Assembly: GCF_006345805.1 (NCBI RefSeq)
Contig: NW_021828343.1
Span: 1 to 8,702 of the forward strand
Source of the DNA: Octopus sinensis
Taxonomy: Eukaryota
Direction: 5' to 3'
DNA: 8,702 bases
How positions within the stretch are numbered: position 1 is the first letter of the stretch; each line of letters begins with the position of its first letter. The notes under the pieces are model-generated. The model saw only the letters and a list, made by a program, of their open reading frames with translations, made no database searches and was not told the origin of the DNA. A program made the translations under genes and the position numbers. Below, piece by piece: positions 793-8,702 of this stretch.

Positions 793-2254
793 TTATTTTT
801 TAAGTCTGGACATTGGCACAATCGAAATTTTGCTCATCGAATTTTTTATCTATTAAATTTAAATGTTTAAACTACCTCAACGCGATTGTTCGATAAAATA
901 CTGATAATTTCTGCAGATGGATAATATGGAGATTCAAACTTATCCAGTCGCAACGAAGGATTTGTTTCAAAGTCTTTTTTAACTCGAACCTAAACATTAA
1001 TTTTTATGCATACCTTATCACCAACACTAAATTCATACTTACTATTGTGAACATTCATTTTTCTGTTCATCGCTTTGTAATAATTAGAATTAGGATCAAT
1101 GGGGTTGATTTCGAACTGAAATCTTTTCGGACTTGTAAACGAATAATTACAGTCATCTACATATAGAAATTCAAATTACATGAATTTTCAATTGGACTCG
1201 GACAATTGTTTGCATCATCGACTTGGTCAGGACTCAACAAATCATTACTTGAATTATCTAAGGAATAATTTTATAATTACAACCATAAAATATTGTATTT
1301 ATTCCACTTATTCCCCGGTATCTTTCAAAAGGGCTCTCATTAGAAGATGAGTGGACAGAAATGTTATAACTGTACACTGCATTTTCTAATTTTTCCAACC
1401 ACTTTTATTATCATTGTCGATCATTTTTGCCATTTTTCTTGTAATTGACTGGTTGAAGCGTTCGACAATCCCTTGTGAGCGGGGATTGTTTGGCCTTCCG
1501 TGAATTCGTTTGATATTGAATTCCTCACATAGATTGGTCATTTCACGATTCTTGAATTCAGTCCCATTATCGGACTGAAGAAATTGACACGGACCATTTA
1601 AGAAAAATAATGATCTAAGGTTTTCACAAACTTCATTTGAGGACTTAGTGTAGAGCAGCCTCGCAAATGCAAATCTATAAAAATTGTTAAAAAAATAACC
1701 TGCTATATACGTCAATGACCGTTAAAATCCATTTAAAATTTTTATTTATAGTAGAAAAACTTTTCAGATCTATAAGATCTATCTGAAATCTTTCATTTGG
1801 GCAAGATGCAAAGACATAGTTATTTATATCTCCAATCTAGGATTTAAAAAAGTTAAAACTTTTAAGGGTCGCGCAAATTTACAAATTTCACAGTTTCGAA
1901 TGACTTTTCGAATAATCTCGTTTTTAACTGTGAATATCGTTGTCGACATTCATATTCAATTTTGTTAACTCCTCCATGCGAGAAGTCATGCAAACTATTA
2001 GCAACGATCTCCATTTCGGGTTCATTGTCTAGGCAAATCACTAGCTTGTGATCTGAATTCGCACATTTAAGATACAATCTATACATTTACAATTTGTATG
2101 ATACCTTTCATTAATTACAGTAAAATTTTCAATTTTCTTCTAACTAGTCTATATTTTTTTGCTTTGTAAGATGTTCAGGAAATTTATCCTGTAAAGCATC
2201 TTTTAAAATTTGATATTCCAAACTATTCTTTACATAACCTTTCTACGAGGACAT
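793..2254 (-). CDS. Ginger-type integrase/transposase (HHCC Zn finger, DDE core, C-terminal SH3/GPY-F-like module); 8 exons; apparent -1 frameshifts
   Basis: Reconstructed motifs: GYVKNSLEY..., LHDFSHGG...RNCEIC (HHCC), ERFQIDLID (D 1777-1779), VIDVYSR|FAFAR, LQSDNGTEF (D 1569-1571), SQGIVERFNQ (E 1461-1463), YSYNISVHSSSNESPFE, EFSVGDK|VRVKKDF, ...RLKK* (TAA 793-795). Needs 7 introns removed and 4 single-A restorations (T runs at 2154-2160, 2133-2136, 1921-1925, 1390-1394). The N-terminus is uncertain: ATG 2254 is followed by an in-frame TAG at 2243-2245. Confidence 0.85.
840..865 (-). other. Spliceosomal intron 7 (26 nt) of Ginger A integrase
   Basis: GTAGTTTAAACATTTAAATTTAATAG; removal gives NNRVE|IKNSMSK...RLKK*. 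Confidence 0.75.
990..1013 (-). other. Spliceosomal intron 6 (24 nt) of Ginger A integrase
   Basis: GTATGCATAAAAATTAATGTTTAG; ends in an in-frame TAG; removal restores FSVGDK|VRVKKDF. Confidence 0.85.
1157..1179 (-). other. Spliceosomal intron 5 (23 nt) of Ginger A integrase
   Basis: GTAATTTGAATTTCTATATGTAG; unspliced reading hits TAG, and removal rejoins an open frame. Confidence 0.7.
1258..1283 (-). other. Spliceosomal intron 4 (26 nt; alternative donor at 1280 gives 23 nt) of Ginger A integrase
   Basis: GTTGTAATTATAAAATTATTCCTTAG; unspliced reading hits TAG; both candidate donors restore the frame. Confidence 0.7.
1675..1699 (-). other. Spliceosomal intron 3 (25 nt) of Ginger A integrase
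   Basis: GTTATTTTTTTAACAATTTTTATAG; removal restores the integrase-core motif ILTVIDVYSR|FAFAR and joins two different frames. Confidence 0.9.
1837..1859 (-). other. Spliceosomal intron 2 (23 nt) of Ginger A integrase
   Basis: GTTTTAACTTTTTTAAATCCTAG; removal joins CEICKFARPLK in frame to IGDINNYVFASCPNERFQIDLID. Confidence 0.85.
2079..2104 (-). other. Spliceosomal intron 1 (26 nt) of Ginger A integrase
   Basis: GTATCATACAAATTGTAAATGTATAG; removal gives FTVINER|LYLK. A 26-nt intron sits at the same place in element B (5327-5352). Confidence 0.75.
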
Positions 2255-2468
2255 TGCTGCAAAATATACTTGCACGCTAGAAATAACTCAAGAAATTTAG
2301 GTTTTCCACCAAAAAAAATTATTTCTGATAATTAAATTCCTAAAAATATAATTTTTTGTCAAAATGAGAGAGTCTTTAGCTAATTTAGTAAATTATTAAA
2401 TGATAAGAATGAGTCGCGGTCTAATTAAAAGATTTATAATTTAATCCCATCAATGTCATAATTGCACA

Positions 2469-2524
2469 TTCAAGGTCACGTCAGGTATCGCGCGGCCCAT
2501 AGGTATCGCGCAAACCATGTCACA
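2469..2524 (-). repeat. Right (gene-upstream) terminal inverted repeat of Ginger element A
   Basis: Reverse complement matches 677-732; contains AGGTATCGCG twice (2483-2492, 2501-2510). Confidence 0.92.
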
Positions 2525-2529
2525 TAATA

Positions 2530-2747
2530 GAACCACATCTATGTCCGATTTGATTATAATATAATTGTATAAGTTGATGAATTAAATGCTTTATGAGACA
2601 TTGTTTTTATAATCCTAACGAGGTTTTCATCGTCAGAAATACCTTCCATTTAATTCTATTGTTTAATTTATCAATTAGCTTTCCTGTTGTTATACAATTA
2701 ATTACAACGACCCCCACAAGCTCAATCGGCTCTTCAAGCGTGTCTTA
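2530..2747. repeat. Copy 2 (main part) of the tandem duplication
   Basis: Near-identical to 27-236; its first bases lie at 662-676, on the other side of the Ginger insertion. Confidence 0.9.
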
Positions 2748-3269
2748 ATAGCTGCTATTATGGGAAACAGTTTCTCAATTCTCTCTGCGGGTTGTCCCGA
2801 TTTCCTTTTGTTTTTTTGTTTATATTCGAATTCTAGATTAGAAAAAATATTACATATGGTATCGATATGGAACCAACGGAGTTTGAGTTTGTTTATCAAA
2901 ATGTACGTGGAAGCCTGGTGCATCTGAACCAGGAAGAAAAGTTATATTTATCATATTTAACAAAATATCAATAAGAAGAAGATTGCTGTCAGTGTCAAGA
3001 GTGAACAAATACTTTTCTAATTGTGAAAAGACTTGGAAAAGAAGTTGTTTATTATCTAATAAGAGTGGGTATTCTACTGATTGTTAAGTAATAGAATATC
3101 TTAACCGCATTCAAAAATCTTGGAAATTTATTGATGAGTATGTTAAAATAAGTTATCAAAACATATAATCGAAAAGATTGAAAAAAGTCCTTCCATTCAA
3201 TACTTTTTAATTGTCAAACGTGGACAGTAGTAGTTTTGGTCCTAACTTGAAATAGTATTATAAGCAATT

Positions 3270-3352: not shown

Positions 3353-5155
3353 ATGTCTAATATGAAAAGAAAGGTTGACCGCGAATGCCGTGTATTCAAT
3401 AAATTATGGGAATTGAAGTATTTTTTTGCGAAAGATGAATTAAAGCAGAAAGCTTATTGTTTAATATGCCACGAACATCTCTCTGTTATGAAGGAGTATA
3501 ACATTCGACGTCATTATGAAACGAATCATGCTCCGATATATTCCAAGTACACTGGAAAGCTACGTGAGGATAAAGTTGAATCACTGAAACGCACTTTACA
3601 AATTCAACAAGGCCTTATAAAAAAAATTTTGAAAATAATGAAAATGTAACAAGAGCTGGATACGAGATAACGAAAATTATTTCACAACACGGGAAACCTT
3701 TAGTGATGGGATGTATATCAAAAATTGCATTATTGAAGCAGTTAATTGTGTGTGCCCACTAAATTCTTCCTTATTTGATGGAATAAGTTTGTCGGCGAGT
3801 TCTGTATCACGAGAACTGAAGAGCTTGGAAAAAATATATATTTACAAATTTGTGAAAAGACAAGTAATATGTTGTGGTATTCTCTTGCATTGGATGAGTC
3901 AGTTGACATTTCGGGAACATCGCAACTTCTTATTTTTATTCGTGGAGTTGATGAGAATATTTCCATAACTGAAGAACTGGCATCTGTTTGTTCTATTCAT
4001 GGAACAACCACTGGAAAAGATATTTTTGATGAATTGGAACAAACTATAAGTGACTATAACCTTGAATTGGAGAAACTGAGTTGTGTTACGATTGACGGGG
4101 CAAAGAATATGGCTGGTTTAAAAAGGGTCTAGTTGGGCAAATAACTAATAAATTGGAGGAATTACATATTTCAAACACTTTGTTCATTCATTGCATCCTT
4201 CATCAGCACGCACTATGTGCGAAGGCTCTTAATATTTCATGTGTGTTGAATCCAGTTATTCGCATAATAAACTTTGTTCGAGGGAGCTCACTTAATCACC
4301 GTCAGTTTAAAGTTTTACTTGACGATTTTGGATCTGAATATTTTGACTTACCATATTACACTGCAGTTAGATGGCTTAGCTGTGGTAATGTATTAAATAG
4401 ATTTTATAAACTCCGAAGTGAGATTGATATTTTTCTAACCAGTAAAAATAACTATTATCCCGAATTATCAGATCTTGCTTGGCTATCAAAATTATCATTT
4501 TTGGTTGATGTTACAACTCACATGAATGAGCTAAATCTGAAATTACAAGGAAAGGAAAACTTAATTTGTGATTTCTACAGGATAATTAAAGCATTTCGAC
4601 AAAAATTGATGTTATTCGAGTCACAACTTGGAGTACGTCAGTTTTCACACTTTTCTTGTTTTAAAAGTTTTTGTGAGGCAAACTGAATGAGGATCGACAT
4701 TACTTTCCAAATTGGAATTATCAAAGAATTAAAACATCATTTTTTACATAATTTTCTGAACTTGACAAAATTGAAAGCGATATAATTTTGTTCGGAAATC
4801 CATTTTCTTGTAATGTTGAGAATGTTCAACATGAATTACAGTAAGAAGTTGTTGACTTACAATCAAAAGAACACCTCAAAGATTGTCACAGACGGACCAA
4901 ACTCCCTGAGTTCTACGAATATATCAAGGATGATGAGTTTCCGAGACTAAAGAATTTTGCGATGATGATTTCTATATTTGGCACAACTTACCAATGTGAG
5001 CAAACGTTTTCGAGGATGAAATATTTAAGTCTGCCCATCGTGCAAGATTGACTGACGGACACTTAAAATCAATTCTCATGATAGGATGCAGCAATTTAAA
5101 ACCAAATATTGATGAACTTATCAAAAAAAGATCACAGTTCCATAGCTCTCATTAA
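3353..5155 (+). pseudogene. Buster/SPIN-type hAT transposase (GTF2IRD2/ZBED-like), frameshifted
   Basis: BED-type Zn finger CLIC...RRHYETNH; LALDES (D 3893-3895); TIDGA (D 4094-4096); HCILH (4189-4203); VRWLS (W 4372-4374); TYQCEQTFS (E 4998-5000); ends QFHSSH* (TAA 5153-5155). At least six -1 frameshifts and two in-frame stops (TGA 4684-4686, TAA 4842-4844). No introns needed. Confidence 0.92.
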
Positions 5156-5524: not shown

Positions 5525-5609
5525 TTTTTAATAAAATTACGCTAAACCCTTTTTATAATAAATTTTTTTTTTTTATTTTTTTTTTTTATATGTAATTAAC
5601 AAATAGTTA

Positions 5610-5784
5610 TTAACTAACTAAATTCCCGGCATCGTAAATGGAAACACAGTTTCCACGTACTATGGCCAAGGAAATCCTTTCGAAAAGCCACTTGGACTCG
5701 CGTGGGTCTCCCCGTTTATGGGAGATCATGCGGCCAAGCTTTTTTAGAAAGGAAAGAGACTTTTCGCCGATGACGCCGGAAGTC
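5610..5784 (-). pseudogene. C-terminus of the CRE RLE domain (non-inverted 3' segment)
   Basis: Translates TSGVIGEKSLSFLKKLGRMISHKRGDPRESKWLFERISLAIVRGNCVSIYDAGNLVS*, directly continuing the plus-strand body; followed by a 22-nt 3' UTR and poly(A). Confidence 0.9.
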
Positions 5785-7587
5785 AGCTAATCTCACTGCT
5801 TGGGCAAAAAAGATAACGGGGTCAGGCCGATCGCCGTGGGTAATGTTTTCCGCAGATTGGCCGGAAAGCTCGTTTGCCACGTTGTGATCCCCGAGTTGGT
5901 CCCGAAATTTTTGCCAGTCCAATTGGGCGTCGGCGTCAGTGGAGGGTGTGAATCGGCTGCCCATGCCGTAAGAGAACTTATGGATTCTTCATTGGAATAT
6001 CTTTTAGTTAAACTGGACATATCAAATGCGTTTAACACAGTGAGACGGGATCATTTGCTCGAGACCTGCCTTTCTCTCGCCCCCTCCGCTTATCCTCTAG
6101 TCCACCTTTCGTACTCACAACCCAGCCCCTCCTGTTTGGCGATTCCTTTATCGTCTCATCGACCGGAGTGCAACAGGGAGATCCCCTGGGGCCTTTCCTA
6201 TTTGCTATGTGTGTCAACTCCGTCGCTCATTCTGTCCGCTCTCCGGTAAATATCTGGTACTTGGACGACGCGACGATTGTGGACCTCCCCGCTCTGTCTT
6301 AGACGACCTGCGGAGCATTATCCCGGCCCTTTCATCCATCGGTCTGGAGATAAACTCAAGCAAGTCCGAAGTCCTAAACCTGAATATTCCTTCCGATTTT
6401 TTTGCCGAAACTCTGGACGCCCTGGAACCTATTCTAAAAGGCGCGCGGGTATCAGAAACAAAGGACCTTGTAATCCTTGGTTCGCCAATTGGTCACGAGG
6501 CCCTCTCACAAACGCTCATCGCCAAGGCAAGCAATCTGTCAAACATGATCGAACGGCTTTCCCTCATTGATGCCACGTCGGGTTCTTTCTTCTGCGTAAC
6601 TATTCTCAACTCCGAGGCTTTTGTACACCCTAAGGAGTTCTCCTTGTTTTCGCATGCCTAATCTGTTATCCGATATCGATTCTATCTTGAAGTCTGGAGC
6701 CGAGTATCTGTGCAACATCCATTTCGACGCTCTGGGGTGGCTTCAATCTTCCCTGCCTGTTAATCTCGGGGGATTGGCCTTCGTTCGCCGTTTATCTGGC
6801 TCTTCCTGCCTTCCTCTCGTCCCTGGCATCATCCCGTGCCCTCACTGACATCGTTCTCAGAAACCTTCCCGAACGAAAAATGTCAGTTGATCACGTGGCC
6901 GCTCTGGACCTTTGGATTCATTGTACAACAAAAGACCCAGTGACCCGTGTATCCAAGCTCAATGGGATGCCATTTCTTGTGAAGCTCTTGACGTACATCT
7001 ACGCAAAATTTCGATCAGCACAGACTTGCATGTCTCCGCGCAGGCTGCTGCACAGGGAGTGGGGCCTGGCTGGATGCTCTCCCTGTCCCTTCCACCGGTA
7101 ACCTACTAGACAAAGATTGCCTACGAATTGGTTTATCATTGCGTCTTGGATTGGAAATCTGCGAAATACACAAATGTCGTTGTGGTGCTGTCATTGACCG
7201 TTTTGGTCTACATCCCCTTTCCTGTCGTCGCAGTGCAGGGCGCGCACCACGCCATGCAGCACTTAACGACGTTATTCAGAGGGGGCTCACGGCCGCTGGG
7301 ATCCCATCAATCCTCGAACCCGTCGGGCTTGCGAGGGGAGACGGAAAAAGACCCGACGGCCTATCGACTTTCCCGTTGAGTTCGGCAAGTCTCTGTTATG
7401 GGATGCGACGTGTTCAGACACTTTCTCGGAGCTCAACCTTCCTTCTTCAGCTGTCGAGCCTGGCTCAGTCTCTCGCAAAACCGAGAAGATGAAGATTGGA
7501 AAGTACAAGGAGCTCTCTGAACGGTATCTGTTCACTCCCATCGCCGTCGAGACTTCCGGCGTCATCGGCGAAAAGTCTCTTTCCTTT
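5785..7587 (+). pseudogene. CRE-type reverse transcriptase, CCHC finger and RLE (inverted segment)
   Basis: KKDNGVRPIAVG; QLGVGVSGGCE; KLDISNAFN; GVQQGDPLGP (from 6165); WYLDD (YLDD 6258-6269); GGLGLRSA; SGAWLDALP; CRCG...HPLSC (7175-7225); RHAALND; KRPDG (RPDG 7349-7360); LLWDAT; K..KY; PIAVETSG. Ten -1 frameshifts and no nonsense codons after correction. Confidence 0.93.
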
Positions 7588-7647
7588 ATAATAAATTATT
7601 TTCGTTTTTAATTGAATGTCAAACTATGTAGGTCACGCTGTCAACAA

Positions 7648-7885: not shown

Positions 7886-7992
7886 CAGGGTTGTTAAAAA
7901 TCATGATTTTTTTCAAAAAAATCAAAAAAATCTGATTTTTTTGATTTAATCACGATTTTTTTGATTTAAATCAGATTTTTTTGAATTAAATG
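7886..7992. mobile_element. Terminus of a second hAT-like DNA transposon with subterminal repeats (internal extent unknown)
   Basis: Starts CAGGGTTG; palindrome GATTTTTTTCAAAAAAATC (7905-7923); three GATTTTTTTGATTTAAATC-like units at an exact 20-bp period (7934, 7954, 7974); preceding 8 bp GTTGTAAC fit the Ac-family nTnnnnAn target pattern. The other end is not in the window. Confidence 0.55.
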
Positions 7993-8498
7993 ATCTTTAT
8001 TTCAAAACGACCCTTTCCACCTGGCTTATCAGAGAACCTCTCTCTTTGTACATAAACACTGAAAAACGGCCACGCAGAACGATCTATCGTAGTTCCTTAT
8101 GTCCACCGGGATCACTTAACTAGTTTGCATACGCTTTCTTTCTTGTGGTCTTCGGGTTAATAAATGTGACCGGTTCATAATGAGATACGGTTGAATACGA
8201 GTCGTTAAAAAGATCGATAATTAATATACCGATTCAAAAGGCCAATTACAATAAACGCAAACGTTCCGAACTAATGATTGAACTTTAAATTTTTGAAAAA
8301 ATGATGTTTTATATTTGAACCATGTTTGCTTTAAAATACTAAAATTATTTACAACATTAGCAAATTATAATGTGAATTATTTTATTTGATACTATAAATT
8401 GAACATTAGCAAAATTACAAGTTTGTAACACTTTAACTTAATCTAACTTAACTCTAACTTTTTTTTGGTTGAGGTGGTGACGTGCCTCTCTTGCACTA

Positions 8499-8702
8499 AT
8501 GTCTATTAAGCATTCGAAACAATCTAATGAACTAACAATCCTTACCTTCAATGTCAGAAGTCTGAAAACCGTGGCTAAGAGGCACCTTCTATGTACTGAT
8601 CTCGAAAAATACCAGGGCTCTATATGCTGTCTACAGGAGACTAAAGTAAAACACGGACTTGACGAAATACACGGAAATTATCGCCTAATACTGCTTCCCT
8701 CA
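8499..8702 (+). mobile_element. Start of an APE-endonuclease ORF of an RTE-like LINE (runs off the window)
   Basis: Open frame from ATG 8499 to the window end: MSIKHSKQSNELTILTFNVRSLKTVAKRHLLCTDLEKYQGSICCLQETKVKHGLDEIHGNYRLILLPS, with APE motifs TFNVRSL and CLQETK. Not in the ORF track, presumably because it has no stop in the window. Confidence 0.85.

What the first reader, a model, noticed from the sequence alone, without database searches (positions are those of the whole stretch)
5552..7597. Twin-priming 5' inversion in an RLE-type (CRE clade) retrotransposon
Seen, reading the minus strand: TSD, 1.8-kb antisense body, 197-nt sense 3' end, poly(A), TSD. 37 bp (5748-5784 and 7551-7587) are perfectly duplicated in inverted orientation. 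The target end AATTTATTATAAA-3' can pair with the element RNA at the inversion point (UUUCUAAAAAA) at 9 of 11 positions, including the three 3'-terminal bases. Established: this is the signature of twin priming described for mammalian L1, an APE element. Inference: an RLE-encoding element without APE can also twin-prime, meaning second-strand cleavage occurred before first-strand synthesis finished; I do not recall this being well documented for the CRE clade.
Basis: partly seen in the sequence, partly recalled or inferred. Interest (0 to 1): 0.8.

Follow-up and report, generated by a model that had tools for sequence, protein, structure and literature searches.

The report
Inverted retrotransposon copy in octopus DNA
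A young copy of an octopus jumping gene that cuts DNA with a restriction-enzyme-like nuclease was inserted with its front part flipped, the footprint of "twin priming" that is otherwise known almost only from mammalian L1 elements, which use a different nuclease.

Summary
A 13-bp target-site duplication (TSD; 5552-5564 and 7585-7597) flanks a poly(A) tail, a 197-nt 3' end and a 1,803-nt oppositely oriented body. The two element segments share a perfect 37-bp inverted overlap.

A full-length copy of the same lineage in Octopus sinensis (L085) differs by one real substitution over 1,995 aligned bp. It shows that the two segments are adjacent in the RNA and that the 37 bp is single-copy.

The cut target end pairs 9/11 with the RNA exactly where the inverted cDNA starts. 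That is the single best site among 1,973 positions.

The element encodes a PHD-like finger, a reverse transcriptase and a zinc knuckle plus restriction-like endonuclease (RLE) whose fold matches R2. It has no AP-type endonuclease (APE).

Twin priming in one insertion event is by far the best explanation. A second flanked 5'-inverted copy, from a different RLE family, lies in locus L084, so this is probably recurrent.

The "CRE clade" label could not be tested. Copies sit in unrelated AT-rich sites, unlike canonical CRE elements. Which enzyme made the insertion is inferred, not shown.

This is a new member of a known kind, of moderate interest.

The parts
5552..5564 (.). Left copy of the 13-bp TSD, TTTATAATAAATT. 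Its 3' end on the + strand is the primer for first-strand cDNA.
   Evidence: 13/13 identical to 7585-7597. 0 of 20,000 random boundary pairs reach 13 bp.
5565..5587 (-). Poly(A) tail, A12 T A10 on the minus strand.
   Evidence: Read directly. Same-family copies carry A27 (L085), A35 (L084 short copy) and about A18 (L002) after the same 3' end.
5588..5784 (-). The 197-nt 3' segment in sense orientation: the last ~58 codons (...ETSGVIGEKSLSFLKKLGRM...AGNLVS*) plus a 22-nt 3' UTR. It corresponds to element nt ~2968-3164.
   Evidence: Translation. Identical to L085 except for one base in an A run. tblastn hit to residues 927-979 of relative P0002.
5748..5784 (.). Arm 1 of the 37-bp inverted duplication, the overlap between the two cDNAs.
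   Evidence: Perfect reverse complement of 7551-7587. Single-copy in colinear copies L002 and L085.
5784..5786 (.). Inversion junction. The 3' segment ends at 5784. The body matches the reference from 5786. Base 5785 (A) matches neither segment (G in L085 and L001). The TC at 5783-5784 could belong to either segment.
   Evidence: Alignment to L001 and L085, which read TTCTCGGCTAATC.
5785..7587 (+). The 1,803-nt inverted 5' segment, element nt ~1193-3004. Pfam RVT_1 covers about 5800-6400, the zinc knuckle 7160-7225, and the RLE core runs from about 7250 onward.
   Evidence: RVT_1 E=2e-17. Profile hit to R2Bm residues 933-996. Together with the 3' segment it aligns to L085 at 99.35% over 1,995 bp. 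It differs from L085 by one substitution at 6713 and 10 one-base homopolymer deletions.
7551..7587 (.). Arm 2 of the 37-bp inverted duplication, at the outer end of the inverted segment.
7585..7597 (.). Right copy of the TSD. On the minus strand it is the top-strand primer AATTTATTATAAA-3', which started the inverted cDNA. 7585-7587 (TTT) is shared between TSD and element.
   Evidence: 9/11 complementarity to the RNA sequence UUUCUAAAAAA immediately 3' of the inverted segment's start. This is the unique best site in the element.

Best explanation
One retrotransposition event of a young octopus non-LTR retrotransposon produced this locus by twin priming. The element is about 3.16 kb and has a single ORF: PHD-like finger, RT, zinc knuckle, RLE, no APE.

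**Shown**
- The two segments are adjacent parts of one element, with a 37-nt overlap.
- One 13-bp TSD flanks the composite.
- The 3' segment ends in poly(A) next to one TSD copy.
- The inverted segment starts next to the other TSD copy, at the one RNA site that best pairs with that target end.

**Inferred sequence of events**
1. The target was nicked on the window's + strand after ...AATAAATT.
2. That 3' end primed cDNA synthesis on the poly(A) tail.
3. The other strand was nicked 13 bp away before the first cDNA had gone far.
4. The freed 13-nt 3' overhang (AATTTATTATAAA-3') annealed to UUUCUAAAAAA about 160 nt from the RNA 3' end. It then primed a second cDNA that ran about 1.8 kb toward the RNA 5' end.
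5. The first cDNA stopped 37 nt past the second start site. This needs either strand displacement or a second RNA copy.
6. The two cDNA ends were joined with 0-2 nt of homology and one extra base. Either end joining or a template jump by the RT onto the second cDNA could do this.

The acting enzymes were most likely the element's own RT and RLE.
For: **Geometry and colinearity**
- Geometry read directly from the sequence.
- L002 11581-11640 reads straight through ...CTTTCC|TTTCTAAAAAAGC....
- The full-length copy L085 15676-17669 matches window 5785-7587 plus rc(5565-5747) at 99.35% over 1,995 bp.
- Both segments therefore match the same lineage, whereas the lineages compared differ by about 25% over most of the element.

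**Statistics**
- TSD: 0/20,000 random boundary pairs.
- Primer-RNA match: unique best of 1,973 sites. Only 8/5,000 random 13-mers from the window match that site as well.

**Element type**
- RLE supported by profile (R2Bm 8gh6, E=0.017, covering CCHC, RH, E and PD).
- RLE supported by fold: the top 7 PDB matches are all R2 proteins, E 7e-6 to 7e-5.
- No APE in the 978-aa ORF.

**Same machinery as other copies**
- Four copies share a nick context close to TT^ATTAT on the primer strand. TSDs are 7-13 bp and all have poly(A) tails.

**Recurrence**
- L084 holds a second composite in another RLE family. An antisense piece (residues ~160-245 of full-length relatives) lies head-to-head with a sense piece (residues ~259-976). 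A 14/15 direct repeat flanks both, with chance about 3/3,000, and there is no poly(A).

**Fit with the L1 literature**
- 5'-inverted inserts have 10-20 bp TSDs and the highest frequency of microhomology at the 5' junction (PMC4245944; PMC2912911).
Against: - There is no read-level or PCR confirmation of either junction.
- No empty site was found.
- The enzyme that acted cannot be read from the footprint.
- The 37-nt overlap means the first cDNA ran past the second priming site. This needs strand displacement or a second RNA molecule.
- Only about 18 RLE-LINE insertions could be inspected outside the window, so the frequency is poorly known.
- The inversion junction shows at most 2 nt of microhomology.
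Confidence: 0.82

Rival explanations
1. Twin priming did occur, but proteins of another LINE carried it out in trans. An APE-type element (RTE, CR1 or L1-Tx1 are active in octopus) would have acted on the polyadenylated RNA of this element, as L1 does when it makes processed pseudogenes.
For: The copy has a poly(A) tail, an AT-rich target and a 13-bp TSD, which falls in the range typical of APE LINEs (PMC6895275). An APE-LINE fragment lies in the same window at 8481-8702. Octopus genomes hold many young APE LINEs (PMC13282606).
Against: Four copies of the family share a similar nick context (TT^ATTAT-like), poly(A) tails and 7-13 bp TSDs, so this is how the family normally inserts. The template differs by only one real substitution from a full-length copy with an essentially intact ORF, which favours cis action. 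The second inverted copy in L084 has no poly(A) tail. The RLE element R4 also makes 13-bp TSDs.
Confidence: 0.1
2. The structure arose after insertion, or from two separate events. Either an ordinary 5'-truncated copy later had its 5' part inverted, or two independent insertions landed head to head.
For: Inverting exactly the 5' part of a truncated copy would give the same topology. Head-to-head neighbours that are clearly independent do exist, for example L083 6505-9025(-) next to 9250-11977(+).
Against: One breakpoint would have to coincide exactly with the element/TSD boundary. Neither the 37-bp inverted duplication nor the 9/11 primer-RNA complementarity would be explained. A body lacking its own 3' end and tail is not a product of target-primed reverse transcription. 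The TSD flanks the composite, not either part. The copy is very young, with one substitution in about 2 kb.
Confidence: 0.03
3. It is an assembly artefact, a chimeric join or mis-oriented segment in an under-polished long-read assembly.
For: Relative to L085 the window copy carries 10 one-base deletions, all in homopolymer runs. This is typical of uncorrected long-read consensus.
Against: A mis-join would not create a matching 13-bp TSD around the composite. It would not place the break at the best primer-RNA pairing site, nor give a 37-bp overlap instead of a full palindrome. An independent assembly (O. sinensis GCA_006345805.1) contains a similar flanked composite in L084.
Confidence: 0.03
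4. It is a cDNA snap-back. The 3' end of the first cDNA folded back and copied the cDNA itself, as described for R2-protein-driven transgene insertion in human cells.
For: Snap-back 5' junctions with antisense transgene sequence next to the target were reported for R2 proteins (PMC11371274).
Against: Snap-back can only duplicate sequence already present in the cDNA. Here about 1,766 nt of the oppositely oriented body (5785-7550) has no counterpart in the 197-nt segment; only 37 nt is shared.
Confidence: 0.02

Closest known systems
5' inversion of human and mouse L1 by twin priming (Ostertag and Kazazian 2001; surveyed in PMC2912911 and PMC4245944)
   Same: One TSD flanks the composite. A sense 3' segment carries the poly(A) tail. 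The inverted segment is the adjoining upstream part of the RNA, with a small overlap or deletion at the breakpoint. The target end and the RNA share microhomology at the internal priming site. The TSD lies in the 10-20 bp range reported for inverted inserts.
   Different: L1 nicks DNA with an N-terminal APE. This element has a C-terminal R2-like RLE and no APE. The host is a cephalopod. In cell assays, 5' inversions were seen almost only with L1 in human cells, plus one Nimb-2_DR insert.
R2 retrotransposon integration (R2Bm and avian R2; the 4-way junction model, PMC6895275)
   Same: The protein layout is the same: RT, then a zinc knuckle, then a PD-(D/E)XK RLE. The fold match is E about 1e-5. 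Insertion is by target-primed reverse transcription from a nick. The RT is known to jump templates and to add untemplated bases.
   Different: R2 is specific for 28S rDNA, makes cuts with little or no stagger, and has no poly(A) requirement. The papers held by the tools that mention twin priming alongside R2 cite it only as an L1 phenomenon, and the one large R2 5'-junction survey I checked contains no occurrence of 'inverted'. This family inserts in varied AT-rich sites with 7-13 bp TSDs.
'Snap-back' 5' junctions of R2-protein-mediated transgene insertion in human cells (PMC11371274)
   Same: An RLE-type protein produces insertions whose upstream junction is to antisense sequence.
   Different: Snap-back copies the cDNA itself, giving an inverted duplication. 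Here the inverted part is upstream RNA sequence that is absent from the other segment, which needs a second priming event on RNA.
R4/Dong, HERO and CRE clades of RLE LINEs
   Same: All have a single ORF with an RT and a C-terminal RLE. R4 makes a 13-bp TSD. Dong targets TAA repeats, and the nick context here reads ATAAT^AA on the sense strand. HERO is largely non-site-specific. Among molluscs, all three types are annotated almost only in cephalopods.
   Different: Clade membership rests on RT phylogeny, which I could not run. Canonical CRE elements insert in spliced-leader genes, and this family does not.

Membership tests
Twin-priming-type 5' inversion (as defined for L1) | A single TSD flanks the whole composite, not each part | tested here: met
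   13/13 TSD at 5552-5564 and 7585-7597. 0/20,000 random boundary pairs reach 13 bp.
Twin-priming-type 5' inversion (as defined for L1) | A sense 3' segment ends in poly(A) next to one TSD copy | tested here: met
   5588-5784 plus the tail at 5565-5587. The 3' end is the same as in family copies L085 and the L084 short copy.
Twin-priming-type 5' inversion (as defined for L1) | The inverted segment is the RNA region directly upstream of the 3' segment. Its 3'-most base abuts the other TSD copy, with only a small overlap or deletion. | tested here: met
   Against colinear copies L085 and L002, the inverted part is element nt ~1193-3004 and the 3' part is nt ~2968-3164, an overlap of 37 nt.
Twin-priming-type 5' inversion (as defined for L1) | The top-strand 3' end is complementary to the RNA at the internal priming site | tested here: met
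   9/11 matches including the 3 terminal bases. It is the unique best site of 1,973, and 8/5,000 random 13-mers match as well.
Twin-priming-type 5' inversion (as defined for L1) | Microhomology at the inversion junction | tested here: inconclusive
   TC at 5783-5784 could belong to either segment. Base 5785 (A) matches neither.
Twin-priming-type 5' inversion (as defined for L1) | Both segments derive from the same source element | tested here: met
   Both align without a real substitution or with only one to the L085 lineage, while the lineages compared differ by about 25% over most of the element.
Twin-priming-type 5' inversion (as defined for L1) | Direct demonstration that the second cDNA is primed from the second-strand nick | not testable with these tools
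   This needs a retrotransposition assay or biochemistry.
RLE-type non-LTR retrotransposon (R2-like architecture) | Reverse transcriptase domain | tested here: met
   RVT_1 E=2e-17 on the window translation and E=3e-16 on the full-length ORF.
RLE-type non-LTR retrotransposon (R2-like architecture) | A C-terminal zinc knuckle followed by a PD-(D/E)XK nuclease | tested here: met
   The profile hits R2Bm 8gh6 residues 933-996, covering CCHC, RH, E and PD (E=0.017). The AF2 model of relative P0121 has pLDDT 92. Its top 7 PDB matches are R2 proteins, followed by PD-(D/E)XK nucleases. Invariant columns in the alignment include E70, D83 (nearly invariant), D99 and K129.
RLE-type non-LTR retrotransposon (R2-like architecture) | No APE domain | tested here: met
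   The 978-aa ORF gives only a PHD-like finger and RVT_1 in Pfam. The same holds for relatives P0002, P0004 and P0025, while P0019 gives RVT_1 alone.
CRE clade (CRE1, CRE2, SLACS, CZAR) | The RT groups with CRE references in a phylogeny | not testable with these tools
   No CRE, R4, HERO or NeSL reference sequences could be retrieved. The protein databases give no clade names.
CRE clade (CRE1, CRE2, SLACS, CZAR) | Site-specific insertion into spliced-leader genes | tested here: not met
   Five copies (window, L001, L002, L084 short copy, L085) sit in unrelated AT-rich flanks. The clade is described as mostly target-specific in PMC4640811.
R4/Dong clade | RT phylogeny; insertion into rDNA or (TAA)n repeats | tested here: inconclusive
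   The phylogeny could not be run. The sense-strand nick context is ATAAT^AA-like in 3 of 4 copies, and the 13-bp TSD equals that reported for R4, but n=4. Dong-R4 is the dominant young RLE LINE type annotated in O. vulgaris.

The most novel reading that the evidence does not exclude
Octopus RLE LINEs twin-prime with their own proteins as a regular side-path, at perhaps 5-10% of insertions. If so, in this branch of LINEs the second strand can be cut, and its 3' end used on RNA, before first-strand synthesis is complete. This would be the first natural evidence that 5' inversion is not tied to APE-type endonucleases. It would also constrain models in which RLE second-strand cleavage depends on a finished cDNA.
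Probability: 0.5. Interest if true: 0.55.

Novelty: new member of a known kind. Interest (0 to 1): 0.45.

Why it matters
How LINEs complete integration is the least understood part of their cycle: when the second strand is cut and what primes the second DNA strand.

For RLE elements, the current models come from R2 biochemistry and place second-strand cleavage after cDNA synthesis. Twin-primed footprints are a natural record of the second-strand 3' end being available while the RNA was still a usable template.

5' inversions have been reported almost only for L1-driven events. Finding them in RLE elements of a mollusc suggests they follow from a long staggered cut plus an RT that accepts loosely paired primers. 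They would then not depend on the APE or on mammalian host factors.

Octopus genomes carry over a thousand very young RLE-LINE copies, so the question can be tested by a census.

Tried and rejected
- **Source assembly.** Exact look-up of seven window ORFs, including ones spanning each junction, found none in the protein collection. I therefore had no independent contigs for the junctions.
- **More family members by protein.** A second protein search with the C-terminal 205 aa found no further proteins of this family.
- **Metagenome scan.** A scan with the RLE-domain alignment gave 80 loci. Only L067 has matches on both strands, in a complex + - + pattern on a 3-kb short-read contig, which I left unresolved.
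- **Clade assignment.** No named CRE, R4 or HERO sequences were reachable. Pfam has no RLE model. PDB hits to the RT do not discriminate clades.
- **Key paper.** The original twin-priming paper (PMC311219) is not held, so I took the defining features from PMC2912911 and PMC4245944.
- **Literature precedent.** Searches for twin priming together with RLE, R2, NeSL, SLACS or Utopia found no report of twin priming in an RLE element.
- **Decayed-copy reading.** I first read the many frameshifts as decay of an old copy. I rejected this after alignment to L085: there are 10 one-base homopolymer deletions and only one substitution.
- **Snap-back and nested insertion.** I considered both and rejected them on geometry.
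- **RNA genes.** Rfam and tRNA scans of the window found nothing.
Full report
**1.

Reading the window gives the following on the + strand:
- a 13-bp direct repeat, TTTATAATAAATT, at 5552-5564 and again at 7585-7597
- a T10 A T12 run at 5565-5587, which is a poly(A) tail on the minus strand
- 197 nt (5588-5784) that is the reverse complement of the end of an ORF plus a 22-nt 3' UTR
- from 5785 to 7587, 1,803 nt reading in sense through a reverse transcriptase (RT), a zinc knuckle and a nuclease domain

The last 37 nt of that body (7551-7587) are the perfect reverse complement of 5748-5784 (pair I2). The minus-strand end AATTTATTATAAA-3' matches the RNA sequence UUUCUAAAAAA at 9 of 11 positions, including the three 3'-terminal ones.

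The one misstatement is that this site lies at the outer end of the inverted segment, next to the right-hand target-site duplication (TSD). It does not lie at the inversion junction 5784/5785.

**2. What the element is**

- The translated body matches Pfam RVT_1 (E=2e-17).
- The nearest proteins are unnamed Octopus sinensis gene models at 65-75% identity, followed by hundreds of 900-1,100-aa proteins from many invertebrates.
- A profile of the C-terminal domain hits the Bombyx R2 protein at residues 933-996. The alignment runs through the CCHC knuckle, the RH, E and PD motifs.
- An AlphaFold model of a relative (pLDDT 92) has seven R2 retrotransposon structures as its best PDB matches (E 7e-6 to 7e-5). 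Other PD-(D/E)XK nucleases follow.
- Locus L085 from O. sinensis holds a full-length copy (14484-17669). Its single ORF of about 978 aa shows a PHD-like finger and RVT_1 and no AP-endonuclease.

**3. The two segments are neighbouring parts of one RNA**

- L002 carries an ordinary 5'-truncated copy that reads straight through ...GACTTCCGGCGTCATCGGCGAAAAGTCTCTTTCC TTTCTAAAAAAGCTTGG....
- The L085 copy matches window 5785-7587 followed by the reverse complement of 5565-5747 at 99.35% over 1,995 bp.
- In element coordinates, the inverted part is nt ~1193-3004 and the 3' part is nt ~2968-3164. The first ~1,192 nt are missing.
- The differences from L085 are one substitution, ten one-base deletions in homopolymer runs, one A-run length difference, base 5785, and a T in the tail.

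The frameshifts that make the copy look decayed are therefore most likely consensus errors of a long-read assembly. The insertion is very young, which fits the perfect TSD and the perfect 37-bp arms.

**4. Why twin priming**

Twin priming predicts four things:
- one TSD around the composite
- a poly(A)-tailed sense 3' part
- an inverted part whose outermost base is the RNA position next to the start of the 3' part
- pairing between the second-strand 3' end and the RNA at that position

All four are met. A 13-bp repeat at the boundaries was never reached in 20,000 random trials. The 9/11 match is the single best site among 1,973 positions of the element. Among the 48 sites that start with TTT, it is the only one with 6 of 8 further matches.

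The inversion junction itself shows 0-2 nt of shared sequence and one base (A, 5785) that matches neither segment. This is compatible with end joining, or with a template jump by the RT.

The 37-nt overlap means the first cDNA ran past the second start site. That needs strand displacement or a second RNA molecule, and I cannot tell which.

**5. Alternatives**

- *Snap-back.* This was described for R2 proteins in human cells (PMC11371274). It can only duplicate what the cDNA already contains. Here about 1,766 nt of the body has no counterpart in the other segment.
- *Later inversion or two insertions.* Neither explains a TSD around the composite, a body without its own 3' end, the overlap, or the pairing site.
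- *Assembly error.* This would not create these features. An independent assembly also holds a similar composite (section 6).
- *Trans-mobilisation by an APE LINE.* This remains possible, at about 10%. However, four copies of the family have the following primer-strand nick contexts, with poly(A) tails and 7-13 bp TSDs:

| Copy | Nick context |
|---|---|
| Window | AAATT^ATTTT |
| L085 | ATCTT^ATTAT |
| L084 short copy | TTATT^ATTAT |
| L002 | CAAAT^AGTAT |

The window insertion therefore looks like a normal product of whatever inserts this family.

**6. A second case**

I fetched six O. sinensis loci totalling 137 kb. They hold roughly 18 RLE-LINE insertions.

In L084, a copy of a different family (about 45-50% protein identity) has an antisense piece at 9573 to ~9810. 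This piece covers residues ~160-245 of full-length relatives. It lies head to head with a sense piece at 9839-11979, covering residues ~259-976. The outer end of the antisense piece falls within a few bases of 9573 (9555-9579) for twelve different query proteins.

The composite is flanked by ATAAACATTGGTGAG (9558-9572) and ATAAATATTGGTGAG (12045-12059), a 14/15 match. The chance of that is about 3 in 3,000. It has no poly(A) tail and a small apparent deletion at the breakpoint.

No DNA-level reference was available for that family, so this case is resolved only at protein level. It still suggests that 5' inversion recurs in octopus RLE LINEs.

**7. Comparison with what is known**

- Reviews state that inversions have been reported only for L1, SVA and processed pseudogenes (PMC4859970).
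- In cell assays with three LINEs, 5' inversions appeared only with L1 in human cells, plus one Nimb-2_DR insert. They went with 10-20 bp TSDs, and a 5-nt overhang was judged too short to pair with RNA (PMC4245944). The 13-bp TSD here fits that rule.
- The R2 papers I could search mention twin priming only as an L1 phenomenon (PMC6895275; PMC2718515).
- I found no paper that reports twin priming for an RLE element. The library is incomplete, so this is absence of evidence only.

**8. The clade**

RLE LINEs are split into CRE, R2, R4, NeSL and HERO. CRE, R2, R4 and NeSL are mostly target-specific, and HERO mostly is not (PMC4640811). Among molluscs, CRE, R2-Hero and R4-Dong types are annotated almost only in cephalopods (PMC10294476). 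In O. vulgaris, the young RLE LINEs are listed as Dong-R4 (1,129 near-full-length copies), Hero and R2 (PMC13282606).

I could not obtain reference sequences for a phylogeny, so the 'CRE' label is untested. The family does not show the spliced-leader specificity of canonical CRE. Its ATAAT^AA-like target and 13-bp TSD recall R4/Dong, but with only four sites that is a lead and not a result.

**9. Verdict**

The finding is real, and the twin-priming reading is well supported. It is a known mechanism seen in a LINE group where it had not, to my knowledge, been documented. The locus is resolved to the base, and a second, coarser example exists. Interest is moderate. It is one clean footprint, the acting enzyme is inferred, and the idea that RLE proteins can cut the second strand early is not contrary to R2 biochemistry.

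Noticed in passing
window 5799, 6127, 6276, 6572, 6602, 6767, 6787, 6913, 7004, 7375: Relative to the near-identical L085 copy, the window has ten one-base deletions, all in homopolymer runs, against a single substitution. This looks like uncorrected long-read consensus error, so apparent frameshifts elsewhere in this window (for example in the hAT-like ORF) may be technical too.
   Followed up: partly
window ~6830-6900; L001 9804-11343; L002 9930-11793: The window/L085 lineage is a mosaic. Its 5' half is about 98.6% identical to the L001 copy and only 76% to L002. Its 3' half is 98.7-100% identical to L002 and only 73% to L001. The switch lies in a block of about 100 bp that is nearly identical in all three, which suggests recombinant (template-switched) lineages.
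   Followed up: partly
L084 9558-12059: A second 5'-inverted RLE-LINE copy from another family. An antisense piece (9573 to ~9810) lies head to head with a sense piece (9839-11979). The composite is flanked by a 14/15 direct repeat and has no poly(A) tail.
   Followed up: partly
window 5564/5565; L085 14477-14483 and 17669; L084 16902-17191; L002 9930 and 11824: Four copies of the family share a similar first-strand nick context: TT^ATTAT-like on the primer strand, ATAAT^AA on the sense strand. TSD lengths are 13 (window), 7 (L085), 11-13 (L084 short copy) and 5-8 bp (L002). This hints at a weak target preference reminiscent of TAA-repeat targeting by Dong.
   Followed up: partly
L085 ~17489: The full-length L085 copy has five A's where the window, L002 and the L084 short copy have six (TTTCTAAAAAAGC). 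This shifts the frame and ends its ORF about 45 codons early. It is either a real defect or an assembly error in that record.
   Followed up: no
window 2706-2792 (+) and 80-236 / 2592-2747: There is a very short C-terminal fragment of another RLE-LINE ORF (KLNRLFKRVLIAAIMGNSFSILSAG). Part of it lies inside a 157-bp direct repeat (97-98% identical) whose copies are 2.5 kb apart. A 61-nt inverted repeat (672-732 / 2469-2529) lies between them. The origin of this arrangement is unexplained.
   Followed up: no
window 3358-5150 (+): A hAT-like transposase remnant, with Spin-doc/BED zinc finger and DUF4371 matches, is interrupted by frameshifts and stops.
   Followed up: partly
window 1389-1721 (-): This is a fragment of an integrase core domain (Pfam rve, E=5e-8), presumably from an LTR retrotransposon remnant.
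   Followed up: no
window 8481-8702 (+): This is the start of an AP-endonuclease domain (Exo_endo_phos, weak, E=0.002) running off the end of the window. It is probably the 5' part of an APE-type LINE.
   Followed up: no
window 7896-8001: A cluster of 20-nt tandem and inverted T-rich repeats (AAATCTGATTTTTTTGATTTAA and variants) lies about 300 bp downstream of the insertion.
   Followed up: no
L067 864-3109: A metagenome contig shows relatives of the element in a + - + pattern: residues 154-452, then antisense 752-919, then 722-963. It could be a rearranged copy or a short-read assembly chimera.
   Followed up: no
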